DNA of 64,000 nt from positions 124,001-188,000 of the IMG/VR virus record IMGVR_UViG_3300046660_000488. The stretch is one strand, 5' to 3'. Below the pieces are notes generated by a model, which saw nothing but the letters and a program-made list of their open reading frames with translations, had not been told where the DNA came from and made no database searches. Numbering within the stretch: the first letter of the stretch is position 1; every line of letters begins with the position of its first letter. A program made the translations under genes and the position numbers. Below, in pieces: positions 9,025 to 64,000 of this stretch.

Positions 9025-9025
9025 A

Positions 9026-9439: not shown

Positions 9440-9493
9440 GCTTGCTATAGAAAGAGCTATAGTACATGGTACTAACTTGCGAAAATCCCGTCA

Positions 9494-9766: not shown

Positions 9767-9769
9767 GGA

Positions 9770-10027: not shown

Positions 10028-10048
10028 GGCTCATCATACCGCACGATT

Positions 10049-10082
10049 TTTGGTTGACCAAATTTTAATGCGTCGGTAACCA
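10049..10082 (+). promoter_or_regulatory. Early promoter giving a leaderless transcript
   Basis: TTTGG-TTGACC-N17-TAACCA-N6-ATG(10089). Confidence 0.55.
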
Positions 10083-12361: not shown

Positions 12362-12400
12362 TTTGAAGCATTGCGGATGTTTAGCCAGCACGACGCTGGC

Positions 12401-12406
12401 TAAATA
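12401..12406 (+). promoter_or_regulatory. T4-type late promoter TAAATA, 5 nt before ATG
   Basis: TAAATAttgcaATG. Confidence 0.75.
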
Positions 12407-12411
12407 TTGCA

Positions 12412-33462: not shown

Positions 33463-33474
33463 GGCGACGCTCGC

Positions 33475-34686
33475 TTACTGGAATTCCGTGCCGCCCTTGC
33501 GGCCACCATAGTCTGGGCTCACCCACTTCACGATCTTGCGGCCGTGGCGGATGTGGCGGTTGTTACCGCCGTCGAGCCCGGTGATCACCACGCCCTCGCG
33601 GATGTGCTTGCCGCTGAAGCTGTCCTTGCCGTCGCGCACGGCGCGCAGGGCGTCCGCGTCGAACGGACCCTCGTAGAGCTTGGGAACGACGTCCATGCCC
33701 CATTGCTCGGCCAGCATGGCGACCGTCTCATAGGGAAGCCAGAGGCCGTTGGTCGTCTCACCGACGAACACGTCGAACAGGGCGATGCCGACGTCCTTCT
33801 TGTTGCGGCCGTACTTCAGGTCTTGGGCGCCGTAAATCTCGGCGAAGGCGCGCACCGGCAGGCCCGCGCAGATCGCCATGCTGAAGGCGGCGATGTTCGG
33901 CTCGAATTGCTTCAGGATGCTGTTCAGGGCGCGGGTGTAGACGTTGTCGTTCGGCTCGCCGTCGTCTTTCGTCTTCTTGAAACTCATGCCCTTCCCGGCC
34001 ATCAACTTCGACGAAATGTAGACGCTCTTGGTCACGCCGAAACAGTGCTCGTGGTTCAGGCCGGGCACGTAGCCGATCTGGACGTTGAAGCCGTGAATTT
34101 TCTCCGTGCCGATGACGGGCTCACCCGGCTCGAACATGTCGGTCTGGTCTTGGATACTGTCGAAATCGTAGCGCAGCGAAACGCCGAACGAGTTGAAGAC
34201 CGACCCTTGGTTCTCGGGTGGTATCTCCGGCTCGTACTTGGTGATGCCGAGCTTGGCGGCGACGTCCGTGCCCACGGTCACGTAGTAGCTGTGGCCTTCG
34301 CCTTCCAGCGGGAATTCGTACTCGGGGTTCCCCTCCAACTCCCAGAGCAACGTGGGGTCGGCGTCTTCCGGAATCGGGACCGGGATCAGCGGCAGGACGA
34401 TGCCTTGAGAGTAGATGCCGCGCAGCCGGAGGGGATGGACGCGATTGCCTTGCGGCCCGGCCAGCCTGCCCATGTTGGTTTCACGGTTCCAGAAATTGTG
34501 GCGGACCAGAATCCAGTCCGGAACGATGGCGCCTTCGGGGACGTAGATGATCGCGTCGCCGGGCTTGTACTGGTTGCGGCCGACCACGCATTCATAGCCG
34601 CCGACCTTGGCGACCGACAGGACGTCGCCGGTGGGGTGATCGTAGACTTCGTCGATCTTGCGGACTTTGACAGCGAAGGTGGACAT
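33475..34686 (-). CDS. RNA ligase, DRB0094/Rnl5-like, with an N-terminal OB-like domain
   Basis: Motif I TEKIHG, EIYG, FDV, EGVV, KWVS.DY. Confidence 0.88.
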   Translation of the reverse strand: MSTFAVKVRKIDEVYDHPTGDVLSVAKVGGYECVVGRNQYKPGDAIIYVPEGAIVPDWILVRHNFWNRETNMGRLAGPQGNRVHPLRLRGIYSQGIVLPLIPVPIPEDADPTLLWELEGNPEYEFPLEGEGHSYYVTVGTDVAAKLGITKYEPEIPPENQGSVFNSFGVSLRYDFDSIQDQTDMFEPGEPVIGTEKIHGFNVQIGYVPGLNHEHCFGVTKSVYISSKLMAGKGMSFKKTKDDGEPNDNVYTRALNSILKQFEPNIAAFSMAICAGLPVRAFAEIYGAQDLKYGRNKKDVGIALFDVFVGETTNGLWLPYETVAMLAEQWGMDVVPKLYEGPFDADALRAVRDGKDSFSGKHIREGVVITGLDGGNNRHIRHGRKIVKWVSPDYGGRKGGTEFQ

Positions 34687-34691
34687 GCGAT

Positions 34692-34745
34692 CCTGACCAA
34701 TGGTTTCTCGTAAACGAGATTAGCCGGTCAGGGCCGCATCGTCAA
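34692..34745 (-). promoter_or_regulatory. Sigma70 promoter inside an RBS-sequestering hairpin
   Basis: TTGACG (34745-40)-N17-TAATCT (34722-17); stem CCTGACC/GGTCAGG plus TCTCG/CGAGA. Confidence 0.7.
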
Positions 34746-35009
34746 TCCGGCTCGGGCGTTCATGAAGGCGTCGAAGCGGTACTGCAAGCACTTGCTCTCG
34801 TAGCTGATGTAGAGGATCAGAACGTCAGCGTCGTATTTGCCGCCCACACGATGCAGCTTGTCGTACTGGTCGATCACCGTTTGGATGAACGTCCGAAAGT
34901 CTTCCTCAAACATCGTCGGGAATTGGAACATTTCCAACCCTCGGTTCACCGATCCCGCCCAGTACTCAAGCGATTCGATGACCTTGTTCAAATATAGACG
35001 CCAGTGCAT
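34728..35009 (-). CDS. Hypothetical protein
   Basis: 93-aa ORF coupled to adk. Confidence 0.55.
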   Translation of the reverse strand: MHWRLYLNKVIESLEYWAGSVNRGLEMFQFPTMFEEDFRTFIQTVIDQYDKLHRVGGKYDADVLILYISYESKCLQYRFDAFMNARAGLTMRP

Positions 35010-35011
35010 GG

Positions 35012-35584
35012 CTACGCTTTCTTGAGTGCCGCCACGATCTTTGCGTGAACGTCTTTGATGGCGGCCATGCCATCGACCTTAATTTCTCGAACGCCAGTGT
35101 TGCCGTAGTAATCGAGTACCGGTGCGGTCTTCTCGAAATAGGTGGCCATGCGCTTGGCGAAGGTCTCGGGGTTGTCGTCGGCGCGACCGTCCGTCTTGAA
35201 ACGGTCGGTGATGCGCTGGAGCAGGACGTCCTGATCGACGCTCAATTCGACGACGGCGTCGATCTTGCAACCACCGCCGCAGGAAACGGTCAGCAGTTCG
35301 TCGAGCGCGAACGCTTGCGCGCAGTTGCGCGGGAATCCGTCGAAGATGATGTTCTTGCCATCATGGCGGATCAACTGTTCGTCGATCAGCTTCAGGACCA
35401 GTTCGTCCGAAGCAAAGATGCCGTTGTCGATCAGGCTCTTGATGTGTCGGCCGCGCTCGGAGTCTTCCGTTGCTGCGGCTCTGAGCATGTCACCCGTGGA
35501 GAGTTGAACCCAACCCTGCTCGACGAGTAACTTAGACTGCGTGCCTTTACCCGAACCGGGCGGGCCGAAGATTACGATTTGCAT
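35012..35584 (-). CDS. adk: Adenylate kinase (short, lidless type)
   Basis: GPPGSGKGTQ, STGDMLR, FDGFPR, GRADDN. Confidence 0.96.
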   Translation of the reverse strand: MQIVIFGPPGSGKGTQSKLLVEQGWVQLSTGDMLRAAATEDSERGRHIKSLIDNGIFASDELVLKLIDEQLIRHDGKNIIFDGFPRNCAQAFALDELLTVSCGGGCKIDAVVELSVDQDVLLQRITDRFKTDGRADDNPETFAKRMATYFEKTAPVLDYYGNTGVREIKVDGMAAIKDVHAKIVAALKKA

Positions 35585-35865: not shown

Positions 35866-35940
35866 GTTCTTCCTCTCATCATCGGCGTAATTGCCTGAGA
35901 CGAGCTTGTGGATTATTTTCAAGCTCGTCAACCAGATTCT

Positions 35941-37098
35941 TCACCATCCGCCGTTCTGACGAGTTCCGTTCGTCGCGCGAGCACGTTGGTGTTCATCCTC
36001 GCCCGGCTGCACGCCTTCCACGTCGTGGAACACGTAATTGTACTTTTCATAGCGGTAGCCATGCTTGGGGATCAGCGTCGCCAGCGTCTGGAAGTCGGCC
36101 TTGAACGCCTTGGCCTCGGGTAGCGTGTCAAACAGCGCGCAGACGCCGAACCCGCCACCATTGATGTAGCGCACCGTACCGGGCTTGGTGAAGCTCGTGA
36201 CGTCAACGTCTTCGCGCAGGATGCGAACACGGTTTGGCATCTTCGGATAGCAGGCGTAGGTGTCGCCTTCCTCGGCTTCGATCTCCATGCCCTCGTCCTC
36301 GTCGTCTCCGTTTTGGAGACGGACGAACACGAATTGCTTCTTGCTGATTTCATCGGTGACGCGGGCGTTGACGATGAAGCTTTCGGCGCCGCTGTTGGCA
36401 TCTTGCCAACGCTTGCTGTTCCAATGGCTCCAGCCAAGGCCGTCCTCCGACAGGACCAGCTTGAAGGGCGGCTCACGACTGAATTCGCGCTCTTCGTAGG
36501 TGCGAATGTAGAATTGGCCGATGTACAGGTATTCAATCGTGCTGGTCCCCAGATTGACGACGTCGCCGGGGATCGGTGTTTTGCGTTCAACGACCGGCTT
36601 GATGTGAAGCTGGTAGGACTGGTGGTTCTCTCGGGTCAGCCAGTTGACGGCGCCCTTGCGGCCCCAAATGTAGCGGCCGACGAACTTGCCATTGCTGACC
36701 TCGCCGCGCAGCAGGATGTCCAGCAGGTTTTCGGCGCTGATCTGAAGCTGGAAACCGCGCGGGTCAGTGATCTGGAACCACTTGTTGTTGGTGCGGTAGC
36801 GGCTCTCGACCGTATCGACCAAGAACCCCTCTTGCAGGACGTTGTCGATGACCACGGGCGTCTTCCGGCCGATAACTCGGGAGACGCGCTCGCTCTTCCC
36901 GGTCTCCTTGTTCGTCACCCAATCCCACGTCTTGCCGTCGCCGCACCAGCCATCGACAGAGTCCTTGCGTTTCTCGAACGCCTTGTCCGTGCCGTAAGGC
37001 GTGGCGAAGGCCAGCGGCGGATCTTCGTGGCTCCATTCAGCGAGCTTTTCGGTCCCGACGTACAGTTTCTCGGGAAAATTGAGGATGTCTTCAGACAT
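35941..37098 (-). CDS. Phage hypothetical protein
   Basis: 385 aa; DPRGFQLQIS..NL..IL...NG...G.YIW. Confidence 0.7.
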   Translation of the reverse strand: MSEDILNFPEKLYVGTEKLAEWSHEDPPLAFATPYGTDKAFEKRKDSVDGWCGDGKTWDWVTNKETGKSERVSRVIGRKTPVVIDNVLQEGFLVDTVESRYRTNNKWFQITDPRGFQLQISAENLLDILLRGEVSNGKFVGRYIWGRKGAVNWLTRENHQSYQLHIKPVVERKTPIPGDVVNLGTSTIEYLYIGQFYIRTYEEREFSREPPFKLVLSEDGLGWSHWNSKRWQDANSGAESFIVNARVTDEISKKQFVFVRLQNGDDEDEGMEIEAEEGDTYACYPKMPNRVRILREDVDVTSFTKPGTVRYINGGGFGVCALFDTLPEAKAFKADFQTLATLIPKHGYRYEKYNYVFHDVEGVQPGEDEHQRARATNGTRQNGGW

Positions 37099-44365: not shown

Positions 44366-44708
44366 AGTTGGCGGAAACCCGCTCGCCATTCACGTCGTAG
44401 TAGAGAGTGCGCGGCTGGCTGTTTTGGCCACCTTGAACCGAATTCAGTGCGACCAGCTTGATGTAGCTCTCGGCCTCGGTTTGCGTCATGAACGTCGCGA
44501 AGAGCGCTCCACCTTCTGGGATATGGGCCATGCCTGTCTGTTTGTTGGAAGCATATTCGTACAGTGGCATGCGGTAATAGTTGCGTGCGATACCGCCGAA
44601 CAGACGCTTGGTTTCATGGAGCTTGAAGCACGAGTACCAGATCACGTCCTGCTCATCGCGGGTTTCGACGATCTTGTACTTTGGATAGTTGACGGTGCGA
44701 AGCGGCAT
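44358..44708 (-). CDS. Hypothetical protein
   Basis: 116-aa ORF. Confidence 0.5.
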   Translation of the reverse strand: MPLRTVNYPKYKIVETRDEQDVIWYSCFKLHETKRLFGGIARNYYRMPLYEYASNKQTGMAHIPEGGALFATFMTQTEAESYIKLVALNSVQGGQNSQPRTLYYDVNGERVSANFT

Positions 44709-44773
44709 GCCAGTCGAGTTTCCCTGAATTTGACACGATAATGCACGCTCGGCAAGCAAAGTCAAGGATCAAA

Positions 44774-44809
44774 TAAATACTGCCACAATTCGTTAAGGAG
44801 ACAGTGGCA
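44774..44809 (+). promoter_or_regulatory. Late promoter with a start-codon-sequestering hairpin (T4 gene e-like)
   Basis: TAAATA at 44774-79; TGCCAC/GTGGCA(tg) stem enclosing AAGGAG. Confidence 0.7.
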
Positions 44810-45447
44810 TGGACGTGCTCGCAATTCAGAAGAAGCTCAAGGCCGCCGGTTACGATCCCGGCACACAGGACGGTGACCTTGGTCCGAAGACCTTCACCGC
44901 CATCGTCAACTACACGGTCCGCAAAGACCTCGGAGCACTGAGCGTCCTGCTCGGCCGCGCCTTGGCCGCCGACCTGCGGAAATACGACATCACCACCGGC
45001 GCCCGTATCTCGCACTTCCTCGCGCAAGCCGCGCACGAGACCGGCGGGTTCAAGCGCTTCAACGAAATGGGCTCGGGCAAAGACCTGAACCACGACGGCT
45101 TCGACGACTACCTTCAGAAGTACGACTTCCGCAAGGACTTGGGCAACACCGGTGTCGGCTTCGGCCCGCGCTTCAAGGGCCGTGGCATCTTCCAACTGAC
45201 CGGCTTCTTCAATTACGTCACCTACGGCAAGCGCATCGGCATCGACTTGGCCAAGACGCCGGAGAAGGCCGCCGAGCCGGACATCGCCGTCCTGATCGCC
45301 TGCTTGTTCTGGACTGACAAGAAGATGAACCCGCTGGCCGACGCTGGCAACATCCGCGAGATCACCCGTCGCATCAACGGCGGCGCCAACGGTCTGGCCG
45401 AACGTCAGGAATACTTCAACCGCATCAGCGGCTTGCTGGGAGCCTAA
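44809..45447 (+). CDS. Endolysin: PG-binding domain plus GH19 catalytic domain
   Basis: IQKKL..AGYDPG..DG.LGPKT; HFLAQAAHETGGF..E; FKGRG.FQLTG..NY; TRRINGG.NGL..R. Confidence 0.92.
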   Translation: MDVLAIQKKLKAAGYDPGTQDGDLGPKTFTAIVNYTVRKDLGALSVLLGRALAADLRKYDITTGARISHFLAQAAHETGGFKRFNEMGSGKDLNHDGFDDYLQKYDFRKDLGNTGVGFGPRFKGRGIFQLTGFFNYVTYGKRIGIDLAKTPEKAAEPDIAVLIACLFWTDKKMNPLADAGNIREITRRINGGANGLAERQEYFNRISGLLGA

Positions 45448-50901: not shown

Positions 50902-52425
50902 ACGCAGCTAACGAAGACCTTCGACCATCGCTCCGAAGAGTCTTCCATCTATAACACATGGGAACAGGAAGGAGCTTTCGCGCCACGCGGAAATGGTCCT
51001 GCCTACTTCCTTCCGATGCCACCGCCGAACATCACCGGCATCCTGCACATGGGTCACGCCCTCTTCGCGACATTGCAGGACATTTCGACCCGATACCACC
51101 GGATGGCAGGCGATTGCACGCTCTGGCTCCCCGGCACGGATCACGCGGGTCTGGCGACGAACACCAAGATCACGGCGCTTATGCTGGAAGACGGGCTGAA
51201 CCCCGACGATCCGGAAGAATTCGACCTGTTCGCCGACATCTACAAGAAGAGCCTCCGCAACACGATCAGCGGCCAACTCCGTTCCTGCGGCGCCAGCGCC
51301 GACTGGAGCCGTGAGACGTTCACGCTGGACGAAGGGTACTCCCGCGCCGTTCTGACGGCCATGGAGCGCTGTGAGGCCGCTGGAATGCTCTATGGGCAGG
51401 ATGGGCAGTGGTGGCTCAACATGAAGCCTCTGGCTGACCGTCTGCTGGCCGAACTCGATGAAGGAAACATCGAGATCATCCCGGCCGGGCAGGAAGGCAC
51501 GCTCCGCAACTTCATCGAGAAAATCGAGCCGTGGTGCATCAGCCGCCAGATCAGGTGGGGCCACAAGCTCCCGATCTGGATCAGGGGCAATGCGCGCATG
51601 ATCTCGGCGGAATCGCCGGGCGGCGGCTGGAAGCAGGAAGACGGTTGCCTCGACACGTGGTTCTCGTCGGCCCTCTGGCCGTTCGCCACGCTGGGCTGGC
51701 CGGACGACACCGAGGACATGCGTCGGTTCTATCCGGCCGCGATGATCGAGACGGCTGACGACATCCTGTTCTTCTGGTGTGCTCGCATGCTGATGATGGG
51801 CCTTCTGCTCACCGATCAATTGCCGTTCAAGACGATCTTCCTGCACGGGCTGATCCGCGACAAGCACGGCAAGAAGATGAGCAAATCGGAAGGCAATGGC
51901 ATCGACCCGCTGGAGATCATCGACCGCTACGGCTGCGACAGCATGCGCTTTGCGCTGGCTGAATCCGCCACGCCCGGTCAGGACATGCGGATGTGGGACG
52001 ACAAATTCCAAGCCGGAAAGGCCCTGCGGACGAAGCTGTGGAACGCGGCGCGCTATGCGCTGAGCCACTACGACCGCATGGGACGGCCAGAGATCGAAGC
52101 TCTGGCCAACCTCAACCGCATGGACGACTTCCATTTCGTCAAGCGGACGCAGGAAGCCTCTGAGACCATCCAGATGGCCTACCGCGACCTTCGATACCAT
52201 GAGGCTGCACACGAGCTTCGTCGATACATTTTCGACGATCTGTGCGGCACGTTCATCGAAGCCACGAAGAGCCGTCTCTACGACGACAACGATCCGAAGG
52301 CCCTCAACACCTTGATGTGGGCTCTGGACATGACTTGCCGGATGGCTCACCCGATCATGCCGTTCGTCACCGAACGCATCCGGGCGACGTTCTCCGACAA
52401 GCCTTTGATTACTGACACTTTCTAA
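50902..52425 (+). CDS. valS: Minimal valyl-tRNA synthetase lacking the editing domain; start codon non-canonical or frameshifted
   Basis: KTFD..E..IY..WE..G.F, PPPNITG.LHMGHA, PGTDHAGLAT, WCISRQ..WGH, DTWFSSALWP, KMSKS.GN. Confidence 0.9.
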   Translation, partial: TQLTKTFDHRSEESSIYNTWEQEGAFAPRGNGPAYFLPMPPPNITGILHMGHALFATLQDISTRYHRMAGDCTLWLPGTDHAGLATNTKITALMLEDGLNPDDPEEFDLFADIYKKSLRNTISGQLRSCGASADWSRETFTLDEGYSRAVLTAMERCEAAGMLYGQDGQWWLNMKPLADRLLAELDEGNIEIIPAGQEGTLRNFIEKIEPWCISRQIRWGHKLPIWIRGNARMISAESPGGGWKQEDGCLDTWFSSALWPFATLGWPDDTEDMRRFYPAAMIETADDILFFWCARMLMMGLLLTDQLPFKTIFLHGLIRDKHGKKMSKSEGNGIDPLEIIDRYGCDSMRFALAESATPGQDMRMWDDKFQAGKALRTKLWNAARYALSHYDRMGRPEIEALANLNRMDDFHFVKRTQEASETIQMAYRDLRYHEAAHELRRYIFDDLCGTFIEATKSRLYDDNDPKALNTLMWALDMTCRMAHPIMPFVTERIRATFSDKPLITDTF

Positions 52426-52456: not shown

Positions 52457-52481
52457 ACCATACTCAAACCATTTGAAGTCC

Positions 52482-53354
52482 ATGACCGTATTCAACAAAG
52501 TTGCGACCGAAATATTCGGTGAGCTTCCTCCGCAAAAGATGCGTCAGGTTGCTTCAGAAATCGAGCAATACTATTTCAGCAAGTACAAAGGTCCAACTGA
52601 GGTCCCCACTCGTTTTAGGGATTTCTTGCCGTATTGCAAAATCCACGCGCAGCCGTCGTACAAGCTGGCCTCCATCAGGCCTCACCAGTATCAGAACGAC
52701 TTGGCGAATAATCTGTCAGGCGTGGCCAATGGTCACCACCATGTGCTGATCAATAGCTCGCGGCAGATGGGCACGACGACGATGCTCATGCTGTTCCAAC
52801 TGTGGTCCGCGCTTCGCACGCCGCTGTCGGACATCCATTTCGCGACGTGGAACCTGAACAGCGCCCACGAAGGCCTCGACCGCATTCGTACGGTTCTGCC
52901 GCACTTGCCGCTCACGTTCGGTGAGGTCGCCTCGATGACGAAATCGGAACTCAAGTTCACCAACGGCTCGCGAATTTCCGGCGCCGCGATAGGCTCGAAC
53001 CACATTGCCGGAAAGCGGTTCTCCACCATCGTCATCGACAACGCCTCGATGGTGGGAATTCACGCTTCTCGGAAGCAAACCCTCGACGACATTTTGCACC
53101 AAGCGGCCGTCTACAACACGCGGGTCGTCATCGCGTCTCAGCCCGGCTATGTCGGCGAGTTCTTCCACAAACTGTGGGCCGATCCGGAAACCGACATCGG
53201 CGGCAAGAGCCGGTTGCAATTTGCCAAGGTCGTCCTGAACTGGCGATCCAACCCGCTGCAAAATACGGGCTGGGCCGCAAGCCATCGGGCGAACCTGCCG
53301 ACGAGCCAGTACCGTCAGGAATTCGAGAACGAGTTCATCTACAAAACAGCTTGA
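52482..53354 (+). CDS. Degenerate large-terminase (gp17) ATPase-domain paralog
   Basis: YQ motif, SRQMGTTT, F.NGS.I, IVIDN, ASQP, YRQEFENEF; no nuclease domain. Confidence 0.75.
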   Translation: MTVFNKVATEIFGELPPQKMRQVASEIEQYYFSKYKGPTEVPTRFRDFLPYCKIHAQPSYKLASIRPHQYQNDLANNLSGVANGHHHVLINSSRQMGTTTMLMLFQLWSALRTPLSDIHFATWNLNSAHEGLDRIRTVLPHLPLTFGEVASMTKSELKFTNGSRISGAAIGSNHIAGKRFSTIVIDNASMVGIHASRKQTLDDILHQAAVYNTRVVIASQPGYVGEFFHKLWADPETDIGGKSRLQFAKVVLNWRSNPLQNTGWAASHRANLPTSQYRQEFENEFIYKTA

Positions 53355-53626: not shown

Positions 53627-53679
53627 TTTGGTTGACCAGATTACCCGATCCTCTATAATCTCGGCGTCAAGGAGACGCC
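53627..53679 (+). promoter_or_regulatory. Early promoter with an SD-covering hairpin
   Basis: TTTGG-TTGACC-N16-TATAAT; GGCGTC/GACGCC stem (53663-79). Confidence 0.7.
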
Positions 53680-56409: not shown

Positions 56410-56448
56410 TCTTATTGACGTTGGGATTTTCGTTTACTAAAAGTGGGC

Positions 56449-56946
56449 ATGGCTCGCGTAAACGAAAATCCCATCGTCCTGCCCCATTGGGCCGTCCTCG
56501 CCGCACCGGTGCTGGACATCTTCCTCTACACCATCGGCCGACCGCAGCGGATCGAAGTCCAGCAAAAGGGCGACGAACTCCGCATGTACTGCGTGGTGAG
56601 CAAGGAAGCTCTTACCAAAATGAACGGCAGTCGTGGGAAGTTTGGTTCGCAATGCGGCCATGCCTACCTGCATGCCTACTGGGACGCCGAGCGGCGTAAC
56701 CCGATCACTGCCCTGCGCTATCGCTACAGCGGCGCGGCGGCTAAGATCACGATGGTCGAAGAGACCACCGCTGGACTCATCGAGCTAAACCAACTCGCTG
56801 AAACTGATCCGGACTTGGGCGCCAGCCTGACAACGGACGCTGGCCGCACGACGTTCAAAGAGCCGACCGTCACGACACTTGGCCTTGGCCCAACCACCAA
56901 GGCCGATGCGGACTGGCTGCTCAACGGCAACTCGATGCTCACCTGA
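56449..56946 (+). CDS. pth2: Peptidyl-tRNA hydrolase, Pth2 family, with an N-terminal extension
   Basis: M..SRGKFGSQCGHA, KI, DAGRT...PTVT.LGLGP; leaderless promoter TTGACG-N17-TAAAAG-N5-ATG. Confidence 0.85.
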   Translation: MARVNENPIVLPHWAVLAAPVLDIFLYTIGRPQRIEVQQKGDELRMYCVVSKEALTKMNGSRGKFGSQCGHAYLHAYWDAERRNPITALRYRYSGAAAKITMVEETTAGLIELNQLAETDPDLGASLTTDAGRTTFKEPTVTTLGLGPTTKADADWLLNGNSMLT

Positions 56947-57300: not shown

Positions 57301-58761
57301 ATGACCAAAACCGTCGTCACACGCTTCGCCCCGTCGCCGACCGGCTACCTCCACATCGGAGGGGCACGCACGGCACTGTTCAACTACCTCTATGCCAAGC
57401 ATATGGGTGGCCAATTCGTGCTTCGGATCGAAGACACGGATCGCGAACGCTCGACGCCGGAATCCGTGCAGGCGATCTTCGACGGCCTGAAATGGCTGGG
57501 CATCCCGCACGACGGCGACGTCGTCTTCCAATCGGCGCGCGAGGCTCGCCACGTTGAGGCGGTGCAATACCTGCTCGACAAGGGCCGGGCCTATCGCTGC
57601 TACCTGACCAAGGACGAGCTTGAGGCCATGCGGGTCAAGGGCAAGGCCTTCCGCTCGCCGCACCGCGATGAGCCGGGCTGGGAGCCGCCGACCGATGACC
57701 GTCCGTTCGTTGTTCGTTTCAAGGGGCCGACCATCGGCCGCACGAACATCAACGACATGGTCAAGGGGAGCGAGGCCGCTGGCGTCTGGTTCGACAACTC
57801 GACGTTCGATGACCTGATCCTGCTGCGTTCAGACGGATCGCCGACCTACAACCTCGCGGTGGTGGTCGATGACCACGACATGGGTGTCACCCACGTGATC
57901 CGGGGCGACGACCATCTGAACAACGCTGGCCGTCAGACTCTGCTGTACGAAGCACTGGACTGGGAAATCCCGGTCTTCGGCCACGTGCCGCTGATCCTGA
58001 ACCCGGAAGGCAAGCCGCTGTCCAAGCGCAACGGCGACGCCGCCGTCTCCGACTATGCGGCTCTCGGCTACCTGCCGGAGGGCATGCGTAACTACCTCAC
58101 CCGTCTGGGCTGGGGTCACGGTGACGACGAAATCTTCTCGGACGCTCAGGCCATCGAGTGGTTCGACGTCGCCGATGTGGTGACTTCGCCCGCCCGCTTC
58201 GACTTCAAGAAGCTGGACGCAGTGAACCAACACTACATCAACGCGATGGATGACGTCACCCTGTCCAACATGGTGATCGACATCCTGAATTCGCGTCGCG
58301 ACGAGCCGTTGAACACCACCGCCGCCCATGCCGTGATGCGCGTTGTGCCCCTCATCAAGATGGGCACGCCGACCGTGGTGGCTCTGGCCAACGCGGCGGA
58401 TTTCGCGACGGTCCTCGACCAACCCCTGACCGACAAGGTCGCGGCGATGTTGGAGGACGACGTGGTCAAGCATCGCCTGTCGGTGCTGACCTCGGAGATC
58501 ATGCTGGCGCCGTGGAACGTTGATTCTCTGAACGAAGCCATCCGTGGCTACGTTCACGTCAACGATCTGAAGATGAAGGATGTCGGCCCGCTGCTGCGCG
58601 GTGTGCTGACCGGCCTTGATCGGGCACCGGACCTTGGCATCTGCCTTGTGGCCATCGGCCGTGAGCGTTCGCTGGCCCGTCTCAACGACGTGGTCAACCG
58701 CCTCACGTTCCCGCCGGTCAACAAGATGGATTCGCATCCAGCGGTTGACGGCCAAAACTAA
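57301..58761 (+). CDS. gltX: Glutamyl-tRNA synthetase
   Basis: VVTRFAPSPTGYLHIGGARTAL, LRIEDTD, PTYNLAVVVDD, VIRGDDH, LSKR; leaderless promoter TTGATT-N17-TAGGTT-N6-ATG. Confidence 0.97.
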   Translation: MTKTVVTRFAPSPTGYLHIGGARTALFNYLYAKHMGGQFVLRIEDTDRERSTPESVQAIFDGLKWLGIPHDGDVVFQSAREARHVEAVQYLLDKGRAYRCYLTKDELEAMRVKGKAFRSPHRDEPGWEPPTDDRPFVVRFKGPTIGRTNINDMVKGSEAAGVWFDNSTFDDLILLRSDGSPTYNLAVVVDDHDMGVTHVIRGDDHLNNAGRQTLLYEALDWEIPVFGHVPLILNPEGKPLSKRNGDAAVSDYAALGYLPEGMRNYLTRLGWGHGDDEIFSDAQAIEWFDVADVVTSPARFDFKKLDAVNQHYINAMDDVTLSNMVIDILNSRRDEPLNTTAAHAVMRVVPLIKMGTPTVVALANAADFATVLDQPLTDKVAAMLEDDVVKHRLSVLTSEIMLAPWNVDSLNEAIRGYVHVNDLKMKDVGPLLRGVLTGLDRAPDLGICLVAIGRERSLARLNDVVNRLTFPPVNKMDSHPAVDGQN

Positions 58762-58884: not shown

Positions 58885-59466
58885 TTAGTGTCGCTGGATA
58901 CGGAACAGTCCGCGATCATCAGACCCACGCATCCCCTGAGCCGCCATATCCTCAGCATCCGGGCAGAACGTGTACGGCACGTTGCCATTCCCCGCGCCAC
59001 GCTTCTGGCGGAGCGCGTCCTTGTACGTCAGGCGGCTGACATGGCCGGAGACGTGCACGTTGGTCTTCAGGTAGGGGTCGATGTTCGGCGAGAAGATCGT
59101 GTCGAACCATACGCCGCCGTCATCGGGGAAGAACACCAGATAGCCGGTGGCGATCTCCAGCATGTGGCGCTCGCCGCCCTGCAACTGCATGAACCGCGTC
59201 TCGCCGGTGTACGTCGCCATCGTGCCTTCGACGTCCTTGACCACGACATCGGCGATGTTCTTGGTGATCCGTGCCCGGACGTTTTCGAAACTCGTCTGCG
59301 TGGCGCCTTGCTTCTTCAGCATGGCGATGTGGTCTCGAACCCACTTGGGGAATCGCAGGGCTTCGATGTCGGAGGCCGTGAAGTCCATCGGGTTGGCGAG
59401 GATCGTGCCCAACACCGGTCGTTTCTTGACCTCGTACGCCAACAGGACGTTGGTGTCGCGCATCAT
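58885..59466 (-). CDS. Hypothetical protein coupled to the neck gene
   Basis: TGATG coupling. Confidence 0.6.
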   Translation of the reverse strand: MMRDTNVLLAYEVKKRPVLGTILANPMDFTASDIEALRFPKWVRDHIAMLKKQGATQTSFENVRARITKNIADVVVKDVEGTMATYTGETRFMQLQGGERHMLEIATGYLVFFPDDGGVWFDTIFSPNIDPYLKTNVHVSGHVSRLTYKDALRQKRGAGNGNVPYTFCPDAEDMAAQGMRGSDDRGLFRIQRH

Positions 59467-60560
59467 CAGAAATCGACCCCCGGCTTGCGCTTGGTGACCG
59501 CCTTGGACAGGGCTTGCTTCTGTTTCTCGACGTCACCGTTCTTGAACGTGGTGTCCTTGGTGTTGTTGAGGAAGTCCCACAGCAGACGGTGAGCCGAAGT
59601 CCACTCCTGCTCTTGGTAATTGATCTCCTGCATCTGCCAGCCCTTGTCGATGCGGCGGAAGAGGACGCTGGGCGAATAGTCGGTCCGCAGGTAGTAGTCG
59701 CCAATGTCGGCGCTTTGCGGGAAGCTGGTTCCAGCGCCCAAGGTCTCGTAGCCGTTGGGCGGCACGCCGTCGCCAGCCCAGACGAACGGGTACTCGTCGC
59801 CAAGCTCGGAGCCCGGACGAATCCAGAAATGCTGGGTCTCGAAATTGCGATGCAGGAAATTGGCCTTGGCGCTCTCGATGATCGCCTCGTTGATCCCCAG
59901 ATCGGTTCCGATGGTGGTCATGATGTCGCCAATGCTTCCCTGATCCAGACCGAACGGATCGGTGGCCTGCTTGTCGAGGATGTCTTGGAATTCCTGCGAG
60001 GCGGTCATCGGCTTGGCCTTGATCCGCCAGATGTGGGCGAACCACGTGGACGAGTAACCGTCCGTCGCCTTGTGGGCGTCGGTGATCACATAGAACTTGT
60101 TGATGGCCGGGCGCTCTTCCCAGACCGTGGGGCCGGGGATGCTGTCGTCGCGAAGGTGGGGAAGCTCGATGACGTCGCCTTCGATCAGTCGGCGGCCGAG
60201 CATCGAGAGCATGTCGTTCAGGTGGAACTCGATCATCACCGTGTCGTCCTGAATGAACATGGCGTACTGGCTCATGCTCCCTTCGAGGTCGCCGACGTTG
60301 TACGTGCCGCGAAGCTCGTAGACCGTGTCGGAATATTTGCGGTCGCGGTTCTCCAGCAGCAACGGGTCTTGGATGCTGGTGATCCCACCGTTGGCCACGG
60401 CCGCGTTGGCGATCCCGTTGGCCGTCTGGTCGTAGACACCCTCGTAGAGGTGGCAGTAGACCGCTGTCCCCGAGATATCCATGTGCTCGGAGATCAGGTT
60501 ATCGATGAATTTGTAATCGAGGTCTTTGAGACCACTATTCCACATTGAGAGGCGCGCCAT
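59466..60560 (-). CDS. Neck protein (T4 gp14-like)
   Basis: TAAATA (60571-66)-N5-ATG; DY.FID..I.E...I.G, IQD.LLLENRDRKY, LGR.LIEGDVIELPHL, W..HIWR.K..P...SQE..DIL. Confidence 0.75.
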   Translation of the reverse strand: MARLSMWNSGLKDLDYKFIDNLISEHMDISGTAVYCHLYEGVYDQTANGIANAAVANGGITSIQDPLLLENRDRKYSDTVYELRGTYNVGDLEGSMSQYAMFIQDDTVMIEFHLNDMLSMLGRRLIEGDVIELPHLRDDSIPGPTVWEERPAINKFYVITDAHKATDGYSSTWFAHIWRIKAKPMTASQEFQDILDKQATDPFGLDQGSIGDIMTTIGTDLGINEAIIESAKANFLHRNFETQHFWIRPGSELGDEYPFVWAGDGVPPNGYETLGAGTSFPQSADIGDYYLRTDYSPSVLFRRIDKGWQMQEINYQEQEWTSAHRLLWDFLNNTKDTTFKNGDVEKQKQALSKAVTKRKPGVDF

Positions 60561-60568
60561 GCCTCTAT

Positions 60569-61087
60569 TTAGGTGGCCAGCATCCCATTAAACGGACTTC
60601 CCGTCAGGTCGATGATGATGTCCGGTCGTGGCGTCAGCCCGGTGCTGCGGCCGGTGTTCCAGTCGCGCACGATCTCATGAACGCTGGAGCACCACTGGCC
60701 ATCGGCTTGGACCGCGTTGGTGAAGACAATCTCCACCCGGTCAGCCCGCTTGTCCACGGCCAGAACACCGTCTTCGGTAGGTCTGGCGACCCATCCCTCA
60801 CCAGTCCAGCAGTAGTGGCAGACGCCCCATTGCTTGAACATGACGCGCATGGTGTCACAAAATCGGTCTCTGGATACAGCGTCAGGGAAATCGGTGAACA
60901 GTTGGAAAGTGTCGCCATTCCGACATACGACGAACAGCATAGGTCTCATCTGAGCCTGAACTTCGCAGGTGCTGAAGAAACCTTGGTGCATCTTGACGAC
61001 AGTGTCGTGCAAGGCGCGGTAATCCTTCATATCGTTAGGTATAGGCTTCACTGGCCCTATCCCAATATGGGAGAATTTCCGTTCCAT
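60569..61087 (-). CDS. Hypothetical protein
   Basis: AT-richer ORF; EGW...RVEIV. Confidence 0.5.
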   Translation of the reverse strand: MERKFSHIGIGPVKPIPNDMKDYRALHDTVVKMHQGFFSTCEVQAQMRPMLFVVCRNGDTFQLFTDFPDAVSRDRFCDTMRVMFKQWGVCHYCWTGEGWVARPTEDGVLAVDKRADRVEIVFTNAVQADGQWCSSVHEIVRDWNTGRSTGLTPRPDIIIDLTGSPFNGMLAT

Positions 61088-61211: not shown

Positions 61212-61255
61212 GGATATTTCAACCCCTCTAAATATCCGGTGTAAACAAGAGGGTT
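61212..61255 (+). promoter_or_regulatory. Late promoter with an upstream anti-SD, inside an inverted repeat
   Basis: GGATATTT/AAATATCC; AACCCCTC (61221-28)-TAAATA (61229-34) ... GAGGGTT (61249-55). Confidence 0.6.
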
Positions 61256-61259: not shown

Positions 61260-61976
61260 ATGACCAACATCGTCATTCTAACCGGAGCGGGCATTAGCGC
61301 CGAATCCGGCATCCAAACGTTCCGCGACAGCAATGGCCTGTGGAACAATCACCGCGTCGAGGACGTCGCCACGCCGGAGGGTTTCAAGAACAACCCGCGC
61401 CTCGTGAACGATTTCTACAACGTCCGCCGGGCGGAACTTAAGACGGTCGAGCCCAACGACGGTCACCGGGCGCTGGCGAAGCTGGAAGAGGCGTGGAAGG
61501 ACATCGGCGGCTTCCTGCTGATCACCCAGAACGTGGATGACCTGCACGAGCGCGCCGGATCGAAGAACATCGCTCACATGCACGGCGAGCTTCGCGGCAT
61601 CCGTTGCACCGGCGAGGACTGCCGCAACCACGGCTACACCGACGACAACATCGGCATCGACACCCTGTGCGAAGACTGCGGCTCACCCATGCGGCCCGAC
61701 GTCGTCTGGTTTGGCGAGTTCCCCAAGTACCTGTCCCAGATCGACCGGGTGCTCGACAACACCGACATCCTGATCGTGATCGGAACGTCCGGGCAGGTCA
61801 TGCCCGCCAGCCTGTTCCCGACCGCAGTGCGACACATGAACCCCAAGGCCAACATCATCGAGGTCAACCCCGACCCGACGCGGGCGGCGGCGTTCAACTA
61901 CATCGTGGAAGGCGCTGCGGCGGTGGTTCTACCCGTGCTGGTGGACAACCTAATCGAACAGTGCAAGCCACGCTAA
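61260..61976 (+). CDS. cobB: Sirtuin, CobB/Sir2 NAD-dependent deacylase
   Basis: GAGISAESGIQTFR, TQNVDDLHERAG, HMHG, Zn-binding Cys residues, RPDVVWFGE, IGTSG.V.PA. Confidence 0.95.
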   Translation: MTNIVILTGAGISAESGIQTFRDSNGLWNNHRVEDVATPEGFKNNPRLVNDFYNVRRAELKTVEPNDGHRALAKLEEAWKDIGGFLLITQNVDDLHERAGSKNIAHMHGELRGIRCTGEDCRNHGYTDDNIGIDTLCEDCGSPMRPDVVWFGEFPKYLSQIDRVLDNTDILIVIGTSGQVMPASLFPTAVRHMNPKANIIEVNPDPTRAAAFNYIVEGAAAVVLPVLVDNLIEQCKPR

Positions 61977-62003
61977 ATATTGGAAACAACGAGGTTTCCA
62001 ATG
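61974..62003 (+). promoter_or_regulatory. Late promoter with a hairpin covering the SD and ATG
   Basis: TAAATA at 61974-79; TTGGAAAC/GTTTCCAA(tg). Confidence 0.75.
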
Positions 62004-62762
62004 GTCGCCCAGACTCCCCGCGATTTGATGATCAAAGACATTCGCATCGCACTTGGCGGCACGATTGTCCGCGTCGAACTTGAACGCGAAGAATACGATT
62101 ACTGCATCAACGTAGCGTTGGATCGCTACCGCCTGCGGTCCGGTAACGCCGTCGAGGAAAGCTTCACGTTCCTCGACGTTCAGCCGGACACGTCCTTCTA
62201 CAAACTGCCTGAAGAGATTCAGGAAGTGCGTGAGGTCTATCGTCGTATCAACGGCAACAGCGGCGGCGCCACCATCGACCCGTTCTCGCTGGCCATGACG
62301 CAGAACATCTACATGATCCAGAACCCCGGCGGACTCGGCGGCGGCGGCTCGGGCCAACTGGCGACCTACGATTTCGCCATGCAGTATCAGAAGCTGGTCG
62401 GCCGCATGTTTGGCCGAGACCTGACCTTCACGTGGAATGCCTCGACGAAGATGATCAACTTCCACCGCCAGTTCAACGCGGTCGAGCAGGTCGGCCTGCA
62501 CGTCTACAACGCCAAGCCGGAAAGCATCCTGCTGGTCGATGTCTACGCCAAGCCGTGGCTGCGTTCCTACGCCATCGCTCAGGCCAAGTACCTTCTGGGT
62601 CAGGCCCGTAGCAAGTTCGGTAGCTTCGCTGGTCCGCAAGGCGGCATCACCCTGAACGGCGACGCCCTGAAGTCCGAGGCTCAAGCCGAAATGGACAAGC
62701 TGGAAGAAGAGGTCAAGAACCTGATCGACCAGAACATGGGCTACGGCTTCACCATCGGATAA
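62001..62762 (+). CDS. Neck protein (T4 gp13-like)
   Basis: I...LGG..V.VEL..E.Y, Y.LP.E...V, W...Y..A..K..LGQAR.KF....GPQGG..LNG..LK.EA. Confidence 0.82.
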   Translation: MVAQTPRDLMIKDIRIALGGTIVRVELEREEYDYCINVALDRYRLRSGNAVEESFTFLDVQPDTSFYKLPEEIQEVREVYRRINGNSGGATIDPFSLAMTQNIYMIQNPGGLGGGGSGQLATYDFAMQYQKLVGRMFGRDLTFTWNASTKMINFHRQFNAVEQVGLHVYNAKPESILLVDVYAKPWLRSYAIAQAKYLLGQARSKFGSFAGPQGGITLNGDALKSEAQAEMDKLEEEVKNLIDQNMGYGFTIG

Positions 62763-62764
62763 TA

Positions 62765-62804
62765 TTGTTGTCCATGCTCCGGTACTGTTATGCTGGAGCA
62801 TGGA
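62765..62804 (+). promoter_or_regulatory. Sigma70-like promoter inside a perfect 10-bp hairpin covering the ATG
   Basis: TCCATGCTCC/GGAGCATGGA; TATGCT-N5-ATG. Confidence 0.65.
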
Positions 62805-63546
62805 CGACAAACATCACCAACTCAAAAAAGACCTCGCAATGCTGGAAGCCATCGACCGCCAATCGTGGTCGCCGGGTCAGCACGCCAAGGACATCGCCCG
62901 GCGGGCTGGTGAGGCGTTCCATGGGAGTCTCGCGGCGCTCGGGGCCACGACCAACCGCCGGACGCTGGACACAGGCTTCCAGCACGAAGAAGACCTGTTT
63001 CGTCCGGAGAACATCGACCACGTCGTCTACAGCGTCGTCCGGAACATCGAAGGCGAGTTGAGCGCAGGGATCAGCAACTACCTGCAACGCCTGCCAGCCA
63101 AGACCGTCTACGACTGCACCACCACCATGGGCATGGACAAATTCGTCGATGATCTCACGGTGATTCTCGCTGGCGCGCCCGGCGGGACCGTCGCGCTGAT
63201 CAGCAATGACGTCTACAACGTGGTGCGGACCGCGCGGAAAACGAAATTCGTTTACGAGCCCATGCAGACGGACCAAGTCATCGCCAAGGTCGGGACCATC
63301 CTGAACCGGGGCATTTTCCTCGACCTCAACGCCAAGCGCAACACGCCCGCGTACATCTGCTATCCGGGCTGGATCATGGCGCCGCCAAGAGACCATCTGG
63401 TCGAGTACACCGGCTTGAAGCAATTTGGTCTCGTCGGCCCGGCATGCCACACCTTCGACACCAATTACGCGCCGTCGTTCCACCTCAGCCGCATCACACC
63501 GCTGGGCGTCGAGTTCGATTCACCGAGCGACATCCCGTTCGCCTAA
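62800..63546 (+). CDS. Truncated, degenerate major-capsid-protein (gp23)-like paralog
   Basis: GAPGGTVALISNDVYNVV and KVGTILNRGIFLDLNAKRNTPAYICYPG resemble the recalled gp23 segments GRGEGNFIIASRNVVNVL and FAGVLGGKYRVYIDQYAKQDYFTVGYKG. Confidence 0.45.
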   Translation: MDDKHHQLKKDLAMLEAIDRQSWSPGQHAKDIARRAGEAFHGSLAALGATTNRRTLDTGFQHEEDLFRPENIDHVVYSVVRNIEGELSAGISNYLQRLPAKTVYDCTTTMGMDKFVDDLTVILAGAPGGTVALISNDVYNVVRTARKTKFVYEPMQTDQVIAKVGTILNRGIFLDLNAKRNTPAYICYPGWIMAPPRDHLVEYTGLKQFGLVGPACHTFDTNYAPSFHLSRITPLGVEFDSPSDIPFA

Positions 63547-64000
63547 GCGGCCTTTTCCTTGGCCAGCGAGACGAACATGCGGGCCATGATCCACAGCGTC
63601 TCGTTCTCTTCGATGGTCAGGATGTGGCCGTGTCCACGGCGTTCGTCCTCGTGGATCGACCAGTTGACGCCATGCAGCAATTGCTCAAGGCCCTCAATCT
63701 CCCAATCGTCTATGCGATAGGCGGCGAGGCGCTTGGGGAACCCGTCCAGCAGGGCGCGTAGCTCGTCGAACCGCTTTGGTGTCCGAACGTAGAAACAGCG
63801 CTCGTGCATGTCGCGGTAGGCTGGATCGTCGGCCACACGGAAATCCTTGGGGTACTGGGCGGCGAAGGCTTCGACCGCCTCGATCTCTTTGTGCCCAAGG
63901 CCGTAGATGGCCACGCCGATCCAGTGTAGGTCGTAGAGCCGCATTTCGGCCAGCCAGCGGGGGCCGTCGTTGTAATTAGGGCGTCCGGTCGTCCAATAGG
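63543..64000 (-). CDS. Hypothetical protein, 5'-truncated by the window edge
   Basis: The frame stays open from ATG 63944 to the window end. Confidence 0.55.
   Translation of the reverse strand, partial: YWTTGRPNYNDGPRWLAEMRLYDLHWIGVAIYGLGHKEIEAVEAFAAQYPKDFRVADDPAYRDMHERCFYVRTPKRFDELRALLDGFPKRLAAYRIDDWEIEGLEQLLHGVNWSIHEDERRGHGHILTIEENETLWIMARMFVSLAKEKAA

What the first reader, a model, noticed from the sequence alone, without database searches (positions are those of the whole stretch)
62765..63546. Truncated major-capsid-like paralog restricted to an early-type promoter
Seen: a 248-aa protein with segments resembling the C-terminal half of T4 gp23. It has no late promoter; instead a TATGCT-N5-ATG leaderless start, and a perfect 10-bp hairpin would silence read-through from the late neck gene. 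Known: capsid proteins trigger defences such as CapRel and Lit. Inference: an early-made capsid mimic that pre-empts sensors, parallel to the dead terminase.
Basis: inference. Interest (0 to 1): 0.6.

Follow-up and report, generated by a model that had tools for sequence, protein, structure and literature searches.

The report
Cut-down capsid-protein copy, separately switched
A 578-kb soil megaphage carries an orphan gene for a shortened, very diverged copy of its major capsid protein, wired to be made with the non-structural genes and masked on late messages, so it probably does something other than build the shell; what it does is untested.

Summary
Window 62800-63546 (+) is a real 248-aa gene with the genome's codon signature. 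It lies in a 578,292-bp virus record with terminal repeats. It has no detectable sequence relative in any database searched. Near-identical (about 90-94%) copies without frame-breaking indels occur in two other soil runs.

Three partly independent lines say residues about 50-236 are a diverged gp23-type (HK97-fold) capsid core. The first third of the capsid protein has no counterpart in it. These lines are a profile comparison with the phage's own capsid-protein family, language-model features, and the ESM Atlas model's structural neighbours. Pfam's Gp23 model and AlphaFold2 do not confirm this.

There is no late-type [C/A]TAAATA box. Instead TTGTTG-N18-TATGCT-N5-ATG puts the gene in a non-random class of 11 genes with a sigma70-type promoter abutting the start codon. 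The other ten are non-structural or of unknown function.

The '10-bp hairpin' is a 20-bp, -34 kcal/mol sense-strand RNA stem. It buries the AUG only in transcripts arriving from the late adaptor gene.

The regulatory reading is therefore plausible. The decoy function is untested. Rivals are a late, translationally coupled minor capsid protein, or a decaying duplicate. Short Gp23-like ORFs recur in this phage clade.

The parts
62800..63546 (+). 248-aa orphan gene (ATG...TAA), a truncated gp23-like protein
   Evidence: ORF list. Codon and GC3 signature. It matches only itself in the 5.8e9 word search and the 1.84e9 HMMER search. Relatives at about 90-94% identity, with no indels in the ORF, occur in runs X2 and X4.
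62989..63444 (+). Core of the capsid-protein similarity (residues 64-215; weaker extension to about 50-236)
   Evidence: hhalign to MCP residues 185-359: P 0.0024, 25% identity, 0 of 300 shuffles as good. Rank 4 of 665 genome proteins. MAFFT gives nearly the same register. Atlas structural alignment covers residues 53-236 with TM 0.58/0.50.
62765..62810 (+). RNA hairpin: 20-bp stem (62765-62784 / 62791-62810), 6-nt loop. The 3' arm contains GGAG and the AUG.
   Evidence: RNAfold: -34.3 kcal/mol, z -9.9. The antisense strand gives only -25.2 kcal/mol because three pairs are G.U. It has the 6th lowest start-region energy of 665 genes. No U-tract follows it.
62765..62770 (+). -35-like TTGTTG (3 of 6 matches to the consensus)
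   Evidence: Pattern scan. An 18-nt spacer precedes TATGCT. Relatives carry a 1-nt deletion at 62788, which makes the spacer 17 nt.
62789..62794 (+). -10-like TATGCT, 5 nt before the ATG
   Evidence: Sequence. It is a member of the offset-5/6 class of TTGNNN-N16-18-TANNNT promoters.
61973..61979 (+). Late-type box CTAAATA serving the adaptor gene; it overlaps the Sir2 stop codon
   Evidence: Motif enrichment 17- to 20-fold upstream of genes. Listed among the motif sites. The T4-family late consensus and its C variant are described in PMC2988020. A gp55-like sigma factor is encoded at G000 301806-302033.
61980..62762 (+). Head-tail adaptor gene (phrog_211 Ad2). The likely true start is ATG 62001. 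Its stop codon lies 2 nt (62763-62764) before the hairpin's first base.
   Evidence: PHROGs E 6e-33. 42 related loci were found.
61260..61976 (+). Sir2-family gene, first gene of the same-strand block; CTAAATA lies at 61228-61234
   Evidence: Pfam SIR2 3e-47. Promoter context.
63543..64000 (-). Convergent 236-aa orphan gene (runs to G000 188253), overlapping the target's stop by 4 nt
   Evidence: Gene call. No Pfam or PHROG family. Changes in relatives fall mainly at third codon positions.

Best explanation
This is a real, fast-evolving accessory gene encoding an N-terminally truncated derivative of the T4-type (gp23, HK97-fold) major capsid protein.

What the protein keeps and lacks. It retains the C-terminal about 55% of the fold: the long helix after the RKL..W.E..QD strand, the 'GNWVVVSP'-like strand and helix, and the 'VGTLN..VYVD..A....vGYKG' strands. 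The first about 110 mature residues of the capsid protein have no counterpart. Assigning these stretches to named HK97 elements (spine helix, A-domain, P-domain, N-arm, E-loop) rests on my own knowledge of the fold, not on a test here. About 50 unrelated, helical residues replace the missing part.

How it is switched. The gene has its own sigma70-type promoter (TTGTTG-N18-TATGCT), placed 5 nt before the ATG, so transcription should start at or next to the AUG and give a leaderless mRNA with an open 5' end. Any transcript that enters from the late (CTAAATA) adaptor promoter also carries the 5' arm of a 20-bp hairpin. That hairpin locks the AUG and leaves no usable Shine-Dalgarno sequence. The protein would therefore be made with the non-structural gene class rather than with the virion genes.

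Likely role. Lacking the N-terminal third of the capsid protein, it is unlikely to be a regular shell subunit. It most likely acts off the virion by occupying something that normally binds free capsid protein, either a host capsid sensor or the assembly machinery.

Shown: the gene, the hairpin, the motif classes and the remote similarity. Inferred: the transcription start, the timing, and everything about function.
For: Gene reality.

Capsid-like core:
- hhalign P 0.0024, 0 of 300 shuffles as good, rank 4 of 665 with by far the longest collinear alignment apart from a second short Gp23-like ORF.
- The independent MAFFT register agrees.
- Atlas feature hits are all capsid families, and structural neighbours are Gp23 clusters with TM 0.52-0.58.

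Promoter class:
- TTGNNN-N16-18-TANNNT occurs 4 and 7 times at offsets 5 and 6 before start codons. Offsets 7-23 average about 0.4, and the genome-wide rate is 2.3e-4 per position.
- The other ten members are aminoacyl-tRNA synthetases, a MazG-like protein, a kinase/phosphatase and unknowns.

Late class:
- 32 genes have [CAG]TAAATA-N4-6-ATG. They include 3275-, 1156- and 991-aa proteins and a virion structural protein.
- A gp55-like sigma factor is present.
- The target has no such box.

Hairpin:
- It is sense-specific: -34.3 against -25.2 kcal/mol.
- The AUG lies in the 3' arm.
- RNA from the AUG onward folds at -2.5 kcal/mol, z +2.0.
- The 1-nt loop deletion in relatives keeps the stem and brings the spacer to 17 nt.

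Locus: it is variable among relatives of the adaptor gene, which fits an accessory gene.
Against: - Pfam Gp23 does not match.
- The hhalign P value would be E about 1.8 in a blind scan of 665 proteins.
- AlphaFold2 stays at pLDDT 33 from the single sequence and 45 with an MCP alignment. Foldseek on that model finds nothing significant.
- The -35 hexamer is the weakest of its class (3 of 6), and the tool's stricter promoter scan finds no site.
- No RNA data exist, so the start site and the timing are not observed.
- A ribosome terminating at the adaptor stop, 2 nt before the hairpin, could melt the base of the stem that hides the AUG. That would allow late, coupled translation.
- Nothing bears on binding partners. 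The complex prediction with the MCP gave no answer.
Confidence: 0.4

Rival explanations
1. It is a late minor capsid, vertex or cement protein made by translational coupling. Ribosomes terminating at the adaptor UAA (62760-62762) unwind the lower part of the stem (about 62765-62775). That releases exactly the AUG-containing segment (62800-62810), and the remaining upper stem holds the AUG next to the terminating ribosome. The hairpin would then enforce a fixed ratio to the adaptor protein rather than silence the gene.
For: The gene lies 37 nt downstream of a late virion gene, on the same strand, with no canonical terminator between them. The lower stem pairs 62765-62775 with 62800-62810. MCP paralogs that are virion parts are known (T4 gp24; annotated in T6). 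Short Gp23-like ORFs recur in this clade, which builds very large capsids.
Against: The sigma70-type promoter geometry would then be a coincidence, with a background chance of about 1e-3 per gene. The structural genes examined here carry the late box (adaptor and the 364-aa virion protein; the head operon is headed by ATAAATA at G000 333807), and this gene does not. The protein lacks the N-terminal third of the capsid protein. The gene is absent from related phages that keep the adaptor, which is unusual for a structural part.
Confidence: 0.25
2. It is not capsid-related. The weak profile match and the low-confidence ESM model are misleading, and this is an unrelated orphan accessory protein. 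The hairpin and promoter logic may still hold.
For: There is no Pfam, PHROG or PDB sequence match. AlphaFold2 confidence is low even with an MCP alignment, and Foldseek finds nothing significant. The Atlas model has pLDDT of only 0.52.
Against: Three methods converge on the same family and the same residue range. The aligned blocks are the family's most conserved motifs. No shuffle, and only two other short Gp23-like ORFs, score higher.
Confidence: 0.17
3. It is a decaying remnant of an MCP duplication with little or no function. The hairpin serves mainly as a 3' stabiliser or processing site (for example for RNase III) for the adaptor mRNA.
For: Divergence is extreme. The protein is truncated. 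Nucleotide divergence between strains is about twice that of the adaptor (7-10% against about 5%). A 20-bp perfect stem is about the size of an RNase III substrate (own knowledge).
Against: The 248-codon frame is intact and has normal codon usage. There are no indels in about 650 nt covered by relatives at 90-94% identity, while the 37-nt spacer has one. The RNA after the AUG is unusually unstructured.
Confidence: 0.1
4. It is an assembly modulator or a weapon against competing phages. As a capsid-protein homolog it joins or caps capsomers, changing or poisoning capsid assembly, as SaPIbov5 Ccm does to its helper phage.
For: Ccm is a capsid-protein homolog that redirects assembly (PMC8569155). 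The truncated fold and the non-late promoter fit a dominant-negative role.
Against: Expressed in its own phage, such a protein would also threaten that phage's own capsids. The complex prediction gave no answer. There is no satellite or competitor context.
Confidence: 0.08

Closest known systems
T4 gp23 / gp24 (Pfam PF07068, T4-type HK97-fold capsid and vertex proteins)
   Same: The collinear match covers the conserved C-terminal blocks of the family. Structural neighbours of the ESM model are Gp23 clusters. Like gp24, it would be a second gp23-derived gene in one genome.
   Different: It is below the Pfam threshold. It has only 248 aa, and the first third of the capsid protein has no counterpart. 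It has no late promoter, no sequence relatives, and lies far (about 150 kb) from the head gene cluster at G000 334-338 kb.
SaPIbov5 Ccm (capsid-protein homolog that redirects helper capsid assembly; PMC8569155)
   Same: It is a capsid-protein homolog that is not the shell's main building block and may act on capsid-protein partners.
   Different: Ccm is full length, belongs to a satellite, and co-assembles into shells. Here the gene sits in the phage itself, is truncated, and its action is unknown.
Start-codon occlusion hairpins (MS2 replicase/coat coupling; own knowledge)
   Same: The AUG is buried in a stable stem just downstream of another gene's stop codon, so translation depends on how the RNA was made or on upstream ribosomes.
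   Different: Here a promoter is nested inside the hairpin, so the gene's own transcript lacks the 5' arm. I found no described case of this arrangement.
T4-family late promoters (TATAAATA and the C variant of Aeh1; PMC2988020)
   Same: The genome's [C/A]TAAATA box, with no -35 element, is used by structural genes, and a gp55-like sigma factor is encoded.
   Different: The target gene lacks the box. In this genome many boxes sit 4-6 nt from the ATG, which implies leaderless late mRNAs. This was not mentioned in the papers read.
Capsid-sensing defences (CapRel SJ46, Thoeris and others; review PMC13728456)
   Same: They are triggered by major capsid proteins, so a capsid-like protein is a conceivable ligand.
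   Different: No capsid-mimic decoy is described in the review or in the papers found. No such defence is known for this phage's unknown host.

Membership tests
Gp23 family (PF07068) | Match to the family HMM at or above the gathering score (24.4 bits) | tested here: not met
   No Pfam hit at E<=0.1. The locus is not among the six-frame hits at E<=10.
Gp23 family (PF07068) | Remote homology to bona fide members over a long collinear stretch | tested here: met
   hhalign P 0.0024 over 148 columns, 0 of 300 shuffles as good, rank 4 of 665. The MAFFT register agrees.
HK97-fold capsid proteins | HK97 core fold (A and P domains, spine helix) | tested here: inconclusive
   The neighbours of the Atlas ESM model (pLDDT 0.52) are Gp23 clusters, with TM 0.58/0.50. 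AlphaFold2 gives pLDDT 33 and 45, and Foldseek against the PDB finds nothing at E<=0.001. Only weak encapsulin and Sf6 rows appear.
HK97-fold capsid proteins | Complete subunit with N-arm and E-loop for inter-subunit contacts | tested here: not met
   The alignment starts at about MCP residue 172 of 403. The first 50 residues of the query are unrelated. The assignment to named elements is from my own knowledge of the fold.
Virion (late) structural genes of this phage | [C/A]TAAATA late box upstream | tested here: not met
   No box within 80 nt upstream. The adaptor, the 364-aa virion protein and the giant structural genes have one.
Virion (late) structural genes of this phage | Presence in purified particles | not testable with these tools
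   This is a metagenomic phage with no proteome.
Leaderless sigma70-type promoter class of this genome | TTGNNN-N16-18-TANNNT ending 5-6 nt before the start codon | tested here: met
   TTGTTG-N18-TATGCT-N5-ATG is one of 11 such genes. It has the weakest -35 of the set.
Leaderless sigma70-type promoter class of this genome | Transcript 5' end at the AUG | not testable with these tools
   No RNA run holds the locus.
Intrinsic terminators | GC-rich stem followed by a U-tract | tested here: not met
   The stem is followed by ACAUCACCAAC. The scan tool does not list it. The genome's real terminators have U-runs.
Anti-defence decoys / trigger mimics | Binding to, or protection from, a capsid-sensing defence | not testable with these tools
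   The host and its defences are unknown. The literature search found no precedent.

The most novel reading that the evidence does not exclude
A megaphage makes, before its virion genes, a cut-down copy of its own capsid protein that cannot assemble. This copy occupies host sensors (or competitors' assembly machinery) that recognise free capsid protein. A promoter nested in a hairpin ensures the copy is not made from late messages. Together with the TerL-like fragment 10 kb upstream and the other short Gp23-like ORFs, this would point to a class of 'trigger-mimic' genes in giant phages.
Probability: 0.15. Interest if true: 0.85.

Novelty: new variant of a known kind. Interest (0 to 1): 0.55.

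Why it matters
Capsid proteins are among the commonest triggers of bacterial immunity, yet no phage-encoded capsid mimic has been described in the papers found. A truncated capsid-protein derivative that is switched apart from the virion genes is a concrete, synthesisable candidate for such a role, or for control of capsid assembly. The locus also shows a compact regulatory device, a promoter nested in a hairpin so that only the gene's own leaderless transcript is translatable. It also reveals that this clade of 400-600-kb soil phages uses leaderless mRNAs widely and carries several short capsid-protein-derived genes of unknown use.

Tried and rejected
Searches for relatives that found nothing:
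- Pfam and PHROGs on the protein.
- tblastn and megablast against 50,697 phage records.
- The word search and the full HMMER search returned only the protein itself.
- A search with residues 1-95 alone, aimed at short-contig fragments.
- Pattern searches in IMG/VR and JGI metagenomes.
- The PDB sequence search gave only a chance xylanase row at E=2.
- Relatives of the adaptor gene do not carry the gene.

Structure and complex predictions that gave no usable result:
- AlphaFold2 on the single sequence gave pLDDT 33.
- AlphaFold2 with an MCP-family alignment gave pLDDT 45. This test is circular in any case.
- Foldseek against the PDB with that model had no row at E<=0.001.
- The complex prediction of the target with the MCP returned no answer, which is not evidence either way.

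Readings rejected:
- The consensus promoter/terminator scan lists no promoter here because it demands 9 of 12 matches. I replaced it with a genome-wide offset analysis.
- An intrinsic terminator was rejected for lack of a U-tract.
- A purely DNA-level palindrome or a minus-strand terminator is less likely, because three G.U pairs make the stem 9 kcal/mol stronger in the sense RNA.
- A T4-like capsid-targeting N-terminus was looked for and is absent from this protein.

No RNA runs exist for the locus.

Full report
WHERE WE ARE. The window is bases 124001-188000 of a 578,292-bp virus record with direct terminal repeats, judged complete. Its GC content is about 59%. The record comes from a rhizosphere metagenome. 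Its major capsid protein (MCP; 403 aa, G000 336004-337215) is a clear Gp23-family protein (PF07068, E 4e-93). That MCP is 77% identical to the MCP of the 469-kb Sinorhizobium phage Phosso, and many 400-600-kb uncultured phages share it. These are the 'group 2.2', T4-core giant phages, which rely on phage sigma factors (PMC7824862; PMC6102473). A gp55-like late sigma factor is encoded at G000 301806-302033.

THE GENE IS REAL.
- ATG 62800 to TAA 63546 gives 248 aa.
- GC at codon positions 1/2/3 is 0.60/0.41/0.82, and the codon log-odds score is 0.40. The 125 long training genes give 0.56 +/- 0.13. The other five frames, including the 231-aa antisense ORF, score below zero.
- The finding's start coordinate (62765) is the first base of the hairpin and of an out-of-frame TTG ORF, not the gene start.
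- Contigs from two soil runs of another study cover most of the gene at about 90-94% identity. They have no indel in the ORF and a single 1-nt deletion in the 37-nt spacer upstream. The two changes listed inside the ORF are one synonymous change and one Tyr-to-Phe change.
- Divergence between strains is 7-10% here and about 5% in the adaptor gene.

IT IS AN ORPHAN BY SEQUENCE.
- Pfam and PHROGs give nothing.
- The 5.8-billion-protein word search and the exhaustive HMMER search of 1.84 billion representatives return only the protein itself.
- There is nothing in cultured phages, IMG/VR or JGI metagenomes.
- There is no second copy in its own genome.
- Forty-two loci with a related adaptor gene, up to 78% identical, lack the gene. 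The DNA downstream of the adaptor differs from phage to phage.

IS IT CAPSID-LIKE? Probably yes. Evidence for:
- hhalign of the single sequence against an 85-sequence alignment of the phage's MCP family plus T6 gp23/gp24, Syn19 and P9VFCI aligns residues 64-215 with MCP 185-359. The alignment has 148 columns, 25% identity and P = 0.0024.
- None of 300 shuffled queries reaches the score (mean 14.7, sd 2.6, maximum 25.7, observed 29.4).
- When all 665 predicted proteins of the genome are run the same way, the gene ranks fourth. Ahead of it are the MCP itself and two other short ORFs that do hit Pfam Gp23. Its alignment is far longer than the chance matches below it.
- The matched blocks are the family's most conserved ones (RKL..W.E..QD, the long helix that follows, GNWVVVSP, VGTLN..VYVD..A...vGYKG). 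MAFFT reproduces the register.
- Independently, the ESM Atlas holds a model of this protein (pLDDT 0.52). Its nearest structural neighbours are Gp23 clusters. For residues 53-236, TM is 0.58 by the query and 0.50 by a 241-aa Gp23 cluster. Every named cluster among the language-model feature hits is a phage capsid family.

Evidence against:
- Pfam's own model does not reach it.
- AlphaFold2 stays unconfident: pLDDT 33 alone and 45 with an MCP alignment.
- Foldseek with that model gives only insignificant encapsulin and Sf6 rows.

I put the capsid-core reading at about 0.8. The first about 50 residues are unrelated and predicted helical. About 110 N-terminal residues of the mature MCP have no counterpart. 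From my own knowledge of the fold these are the N-arm and E-loop, so the protein is unlikely to be an ordinary shell subunit.

PROMOTER CLASSES OF THIS GENOME.
- Late class. Upstream regions are 17- to 20-fold enriched in CTAAATA/ATAAATA. This is the T4-family late box, including the C variant described for Aeh1 (PMC2988020). The box sits 4-6 nt before the start codon of 32 genes. These include proteins of 3275, 1156 and 991 aa and the 364-aa virion protein at 59466-60560. Since the T4 box ends at -6, these should be leaderless late mRNAs. The adaptor gene just upstream of the target has a box at 61973-61979, and Sir2 has one at 61228-61234. The target has none.
- Sigma70 class. The loose sigma70 pattern TTGNNN-N16-18-TANNNT is distributed in two sharp peaks relative to start codons. 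One peak is at 5-6 nt (4 + 7 genes) and one at 24-33 nt. Between them the count is about 0.4 per offset, and the genome-wide rate is 2.3e-4 per position.
- The target is one of the 11 genes at 5-6 nt (TTGTTG-N18-TATGCT-GGAGC-ATG). The other ten are arginyl- and glutamyl-tRNA synthetases, a MazG-like protein, a kinase/phosphatase, and six with no annotated function. None is annotated as structural.
- The target's -35 hexamer is the weakest of the set. In the related strains the 1-nt deletion shortens the spacer to the optimal 17 nt.

THE HAIRPIN.
It has 17 Watson-Crick and 3 G.U pairs.
- dG is -34.3 kcal/mol and z is -9.9.
- Because of the G.U pairs, the antisense RNA folds 9 kcal/mol less well. 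This points to a function in the sense RNA.
- The stem spans exactly from the -35-like hexamer to +11. The GGAG and the AUG lie in the 3' arm.
- No U-tract follows the stem, unlike the genome's evident terminators.
- RNA beginning at the AUG is almost structure-free: -2.5 kcal/mol, with 198 of 200 shuffles folding at least as well.
- Among 665 start regions this is the sixth most stable. Several of the others are mis-called starts inside terminators.

HOW IT MOST LIKELY WORKS. A transcript started by the nested promoter lacks the 5' arm and offers a free 5'-terminal AUG. A transcript arriving from the late adaptor promoter contains both arms and hides the AUG, with no Shine-Dalgarno sequence at a usable distance.

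The main rival uses the same geometry the other way round. The adaptor stop codon ends 2 nt before the stem. A terminating ribosome should melt roughly the lower 10 bp, which are the pairs that hide the AUG. The gene could then be a late product strictly coupled to the adaptor. Only 5'-end mapping or reporter fusions can decide between these, and no RNA run holds the locus.

FUNCTION. Nothing here tests function. A truncated capsid-protein core made apart from the virion genes suggests a protein that binds what free capsid protein binds. I found no described capsid-mimic decoy. A complex prediction with the MCP gave no answer.

The gene is not alone. This genome has further short Gp23-like ORFs: 233 aa at G000 34508-35209, and two tandem ORFs from 434191 to 435155 that carry the MCP's C-terminal motif. 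Three of five related megaphages examined have their own short Gp23-like ORFs. A 293-aa terminase-like fragment lies 10 kb upstream of the target.

VERDICT. The regulatory interpretation is plausible but unproven. The decoy function is speculative. It is a new variant of a known kind (capsid-protein paralogs), of moderate interest. It would be of high interest if a mimic role were shown.

Noticed in passing
G000 (whole genome); e.g. window 60560-60578 (-), 12400-12412 (+): 32 genes have the late box [CAG]TAAATA only 4-6 nt before the start codon, which implies widespread leaderless late mRNAs. They include giant (3275, 1156 and 991 aa) presumably structural proteins.
   Followed up: partly
G000 32770-34437(-), 35888-36850(-), 44585-45253(+), 124504-125802(-) = window 504-1802, 136412-137710(+) = window 12412-13710, 174354-174668(-), 406984-407631(+), 466968-467333(+), 479835-480416(-), 500340-501059(+), 550078-550665(+): At least 12 late, leaderless genes encode otherwise unrelated-looking proteins (104-555 aa) that all begin MRxxE(I/L)... 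with an (L/I)-x-E within the first 8-13 residues. This resembles the T4 capsid-targeting sequence plus prohead-protease site (own knowledge). They may be proteins packed into the head and ejected.
   Followed up: partly
G000 34508-35209 (+); 434191-434670 and the next ORF to 435155 (+); relatives G001 396695-397093, G004 256480-256566 / 299832-299999, G005 337097-337366: There are further short ORFs with partial Gp23 similarity. One is 233 aa and matches MCP 193-334. Two tandem ORFs of about 160 aa carry the MCP's C-terminal CPY..P..F.P motif. Related megaphages have their own. Short capsid-protein-derived genes seem to be a trait of the clade.
   Followed up: partly
window 52473-53354 (+): A 293-aa protein matches only part of large-terminase families (phrog_2, E 9e-11).
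   Followed up: no
22 sites genome-wide, e.g. window 3624-3633, 10051-10060, 53629-53638: The palindrome (A/T)TTTGGTYRACCAAAT has 22 copies, of which 17 are intergenic (17.5% of the genome is intergenic). It contains the -35 TTGACC of the sigma70-type promoters. It may be an operator for a phage regulator of that gene class.
   Followed up: partly
window 61212-61237 and 61260-61976: A Sir2-family gene sits between virion genes and heads the same-strand block. Its CTAAATA box lies inside an 8-bp inverted repeat (GGATATTT / AAATATCC). The closest relatives of the adaptor locus lack Sir2 there.
   Followed up: no
window 61973-62003: The adaptor gene probably starts at ATG 62001 (AGG 8 nt upstream), not at the TTG 61980 given by the ORF list. 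Its late box overlaps the Sir2 stop codon.
   Followed up: partly
window 51016-52425, 56443-56946, 57301-58761; G000 8459-10063: There is a cluster of translation genes: a class-I tRNA-synthetase fragment-like ORF (469 aa), a PTH2 peptidyl-tRNA hydrolase, GluRS and, elsewhere, ArgRS. GluRS and ArgRS have sigma70-type promoters abutting the ATG.
   Followed up: partly
G000 288550-288625; window 12377-12412: Other promoters are nested in inverted repeats. In one, a late box and ATG lie in the loop of a roughly 16-bp imperfect hairpin (G000 288580). In another, a late box forms the 3' arm of a 13-bp hairpin (G000 136377-136407). Hairpin-embedded promoters may be a recurring insulating device here.
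   Followed up: no
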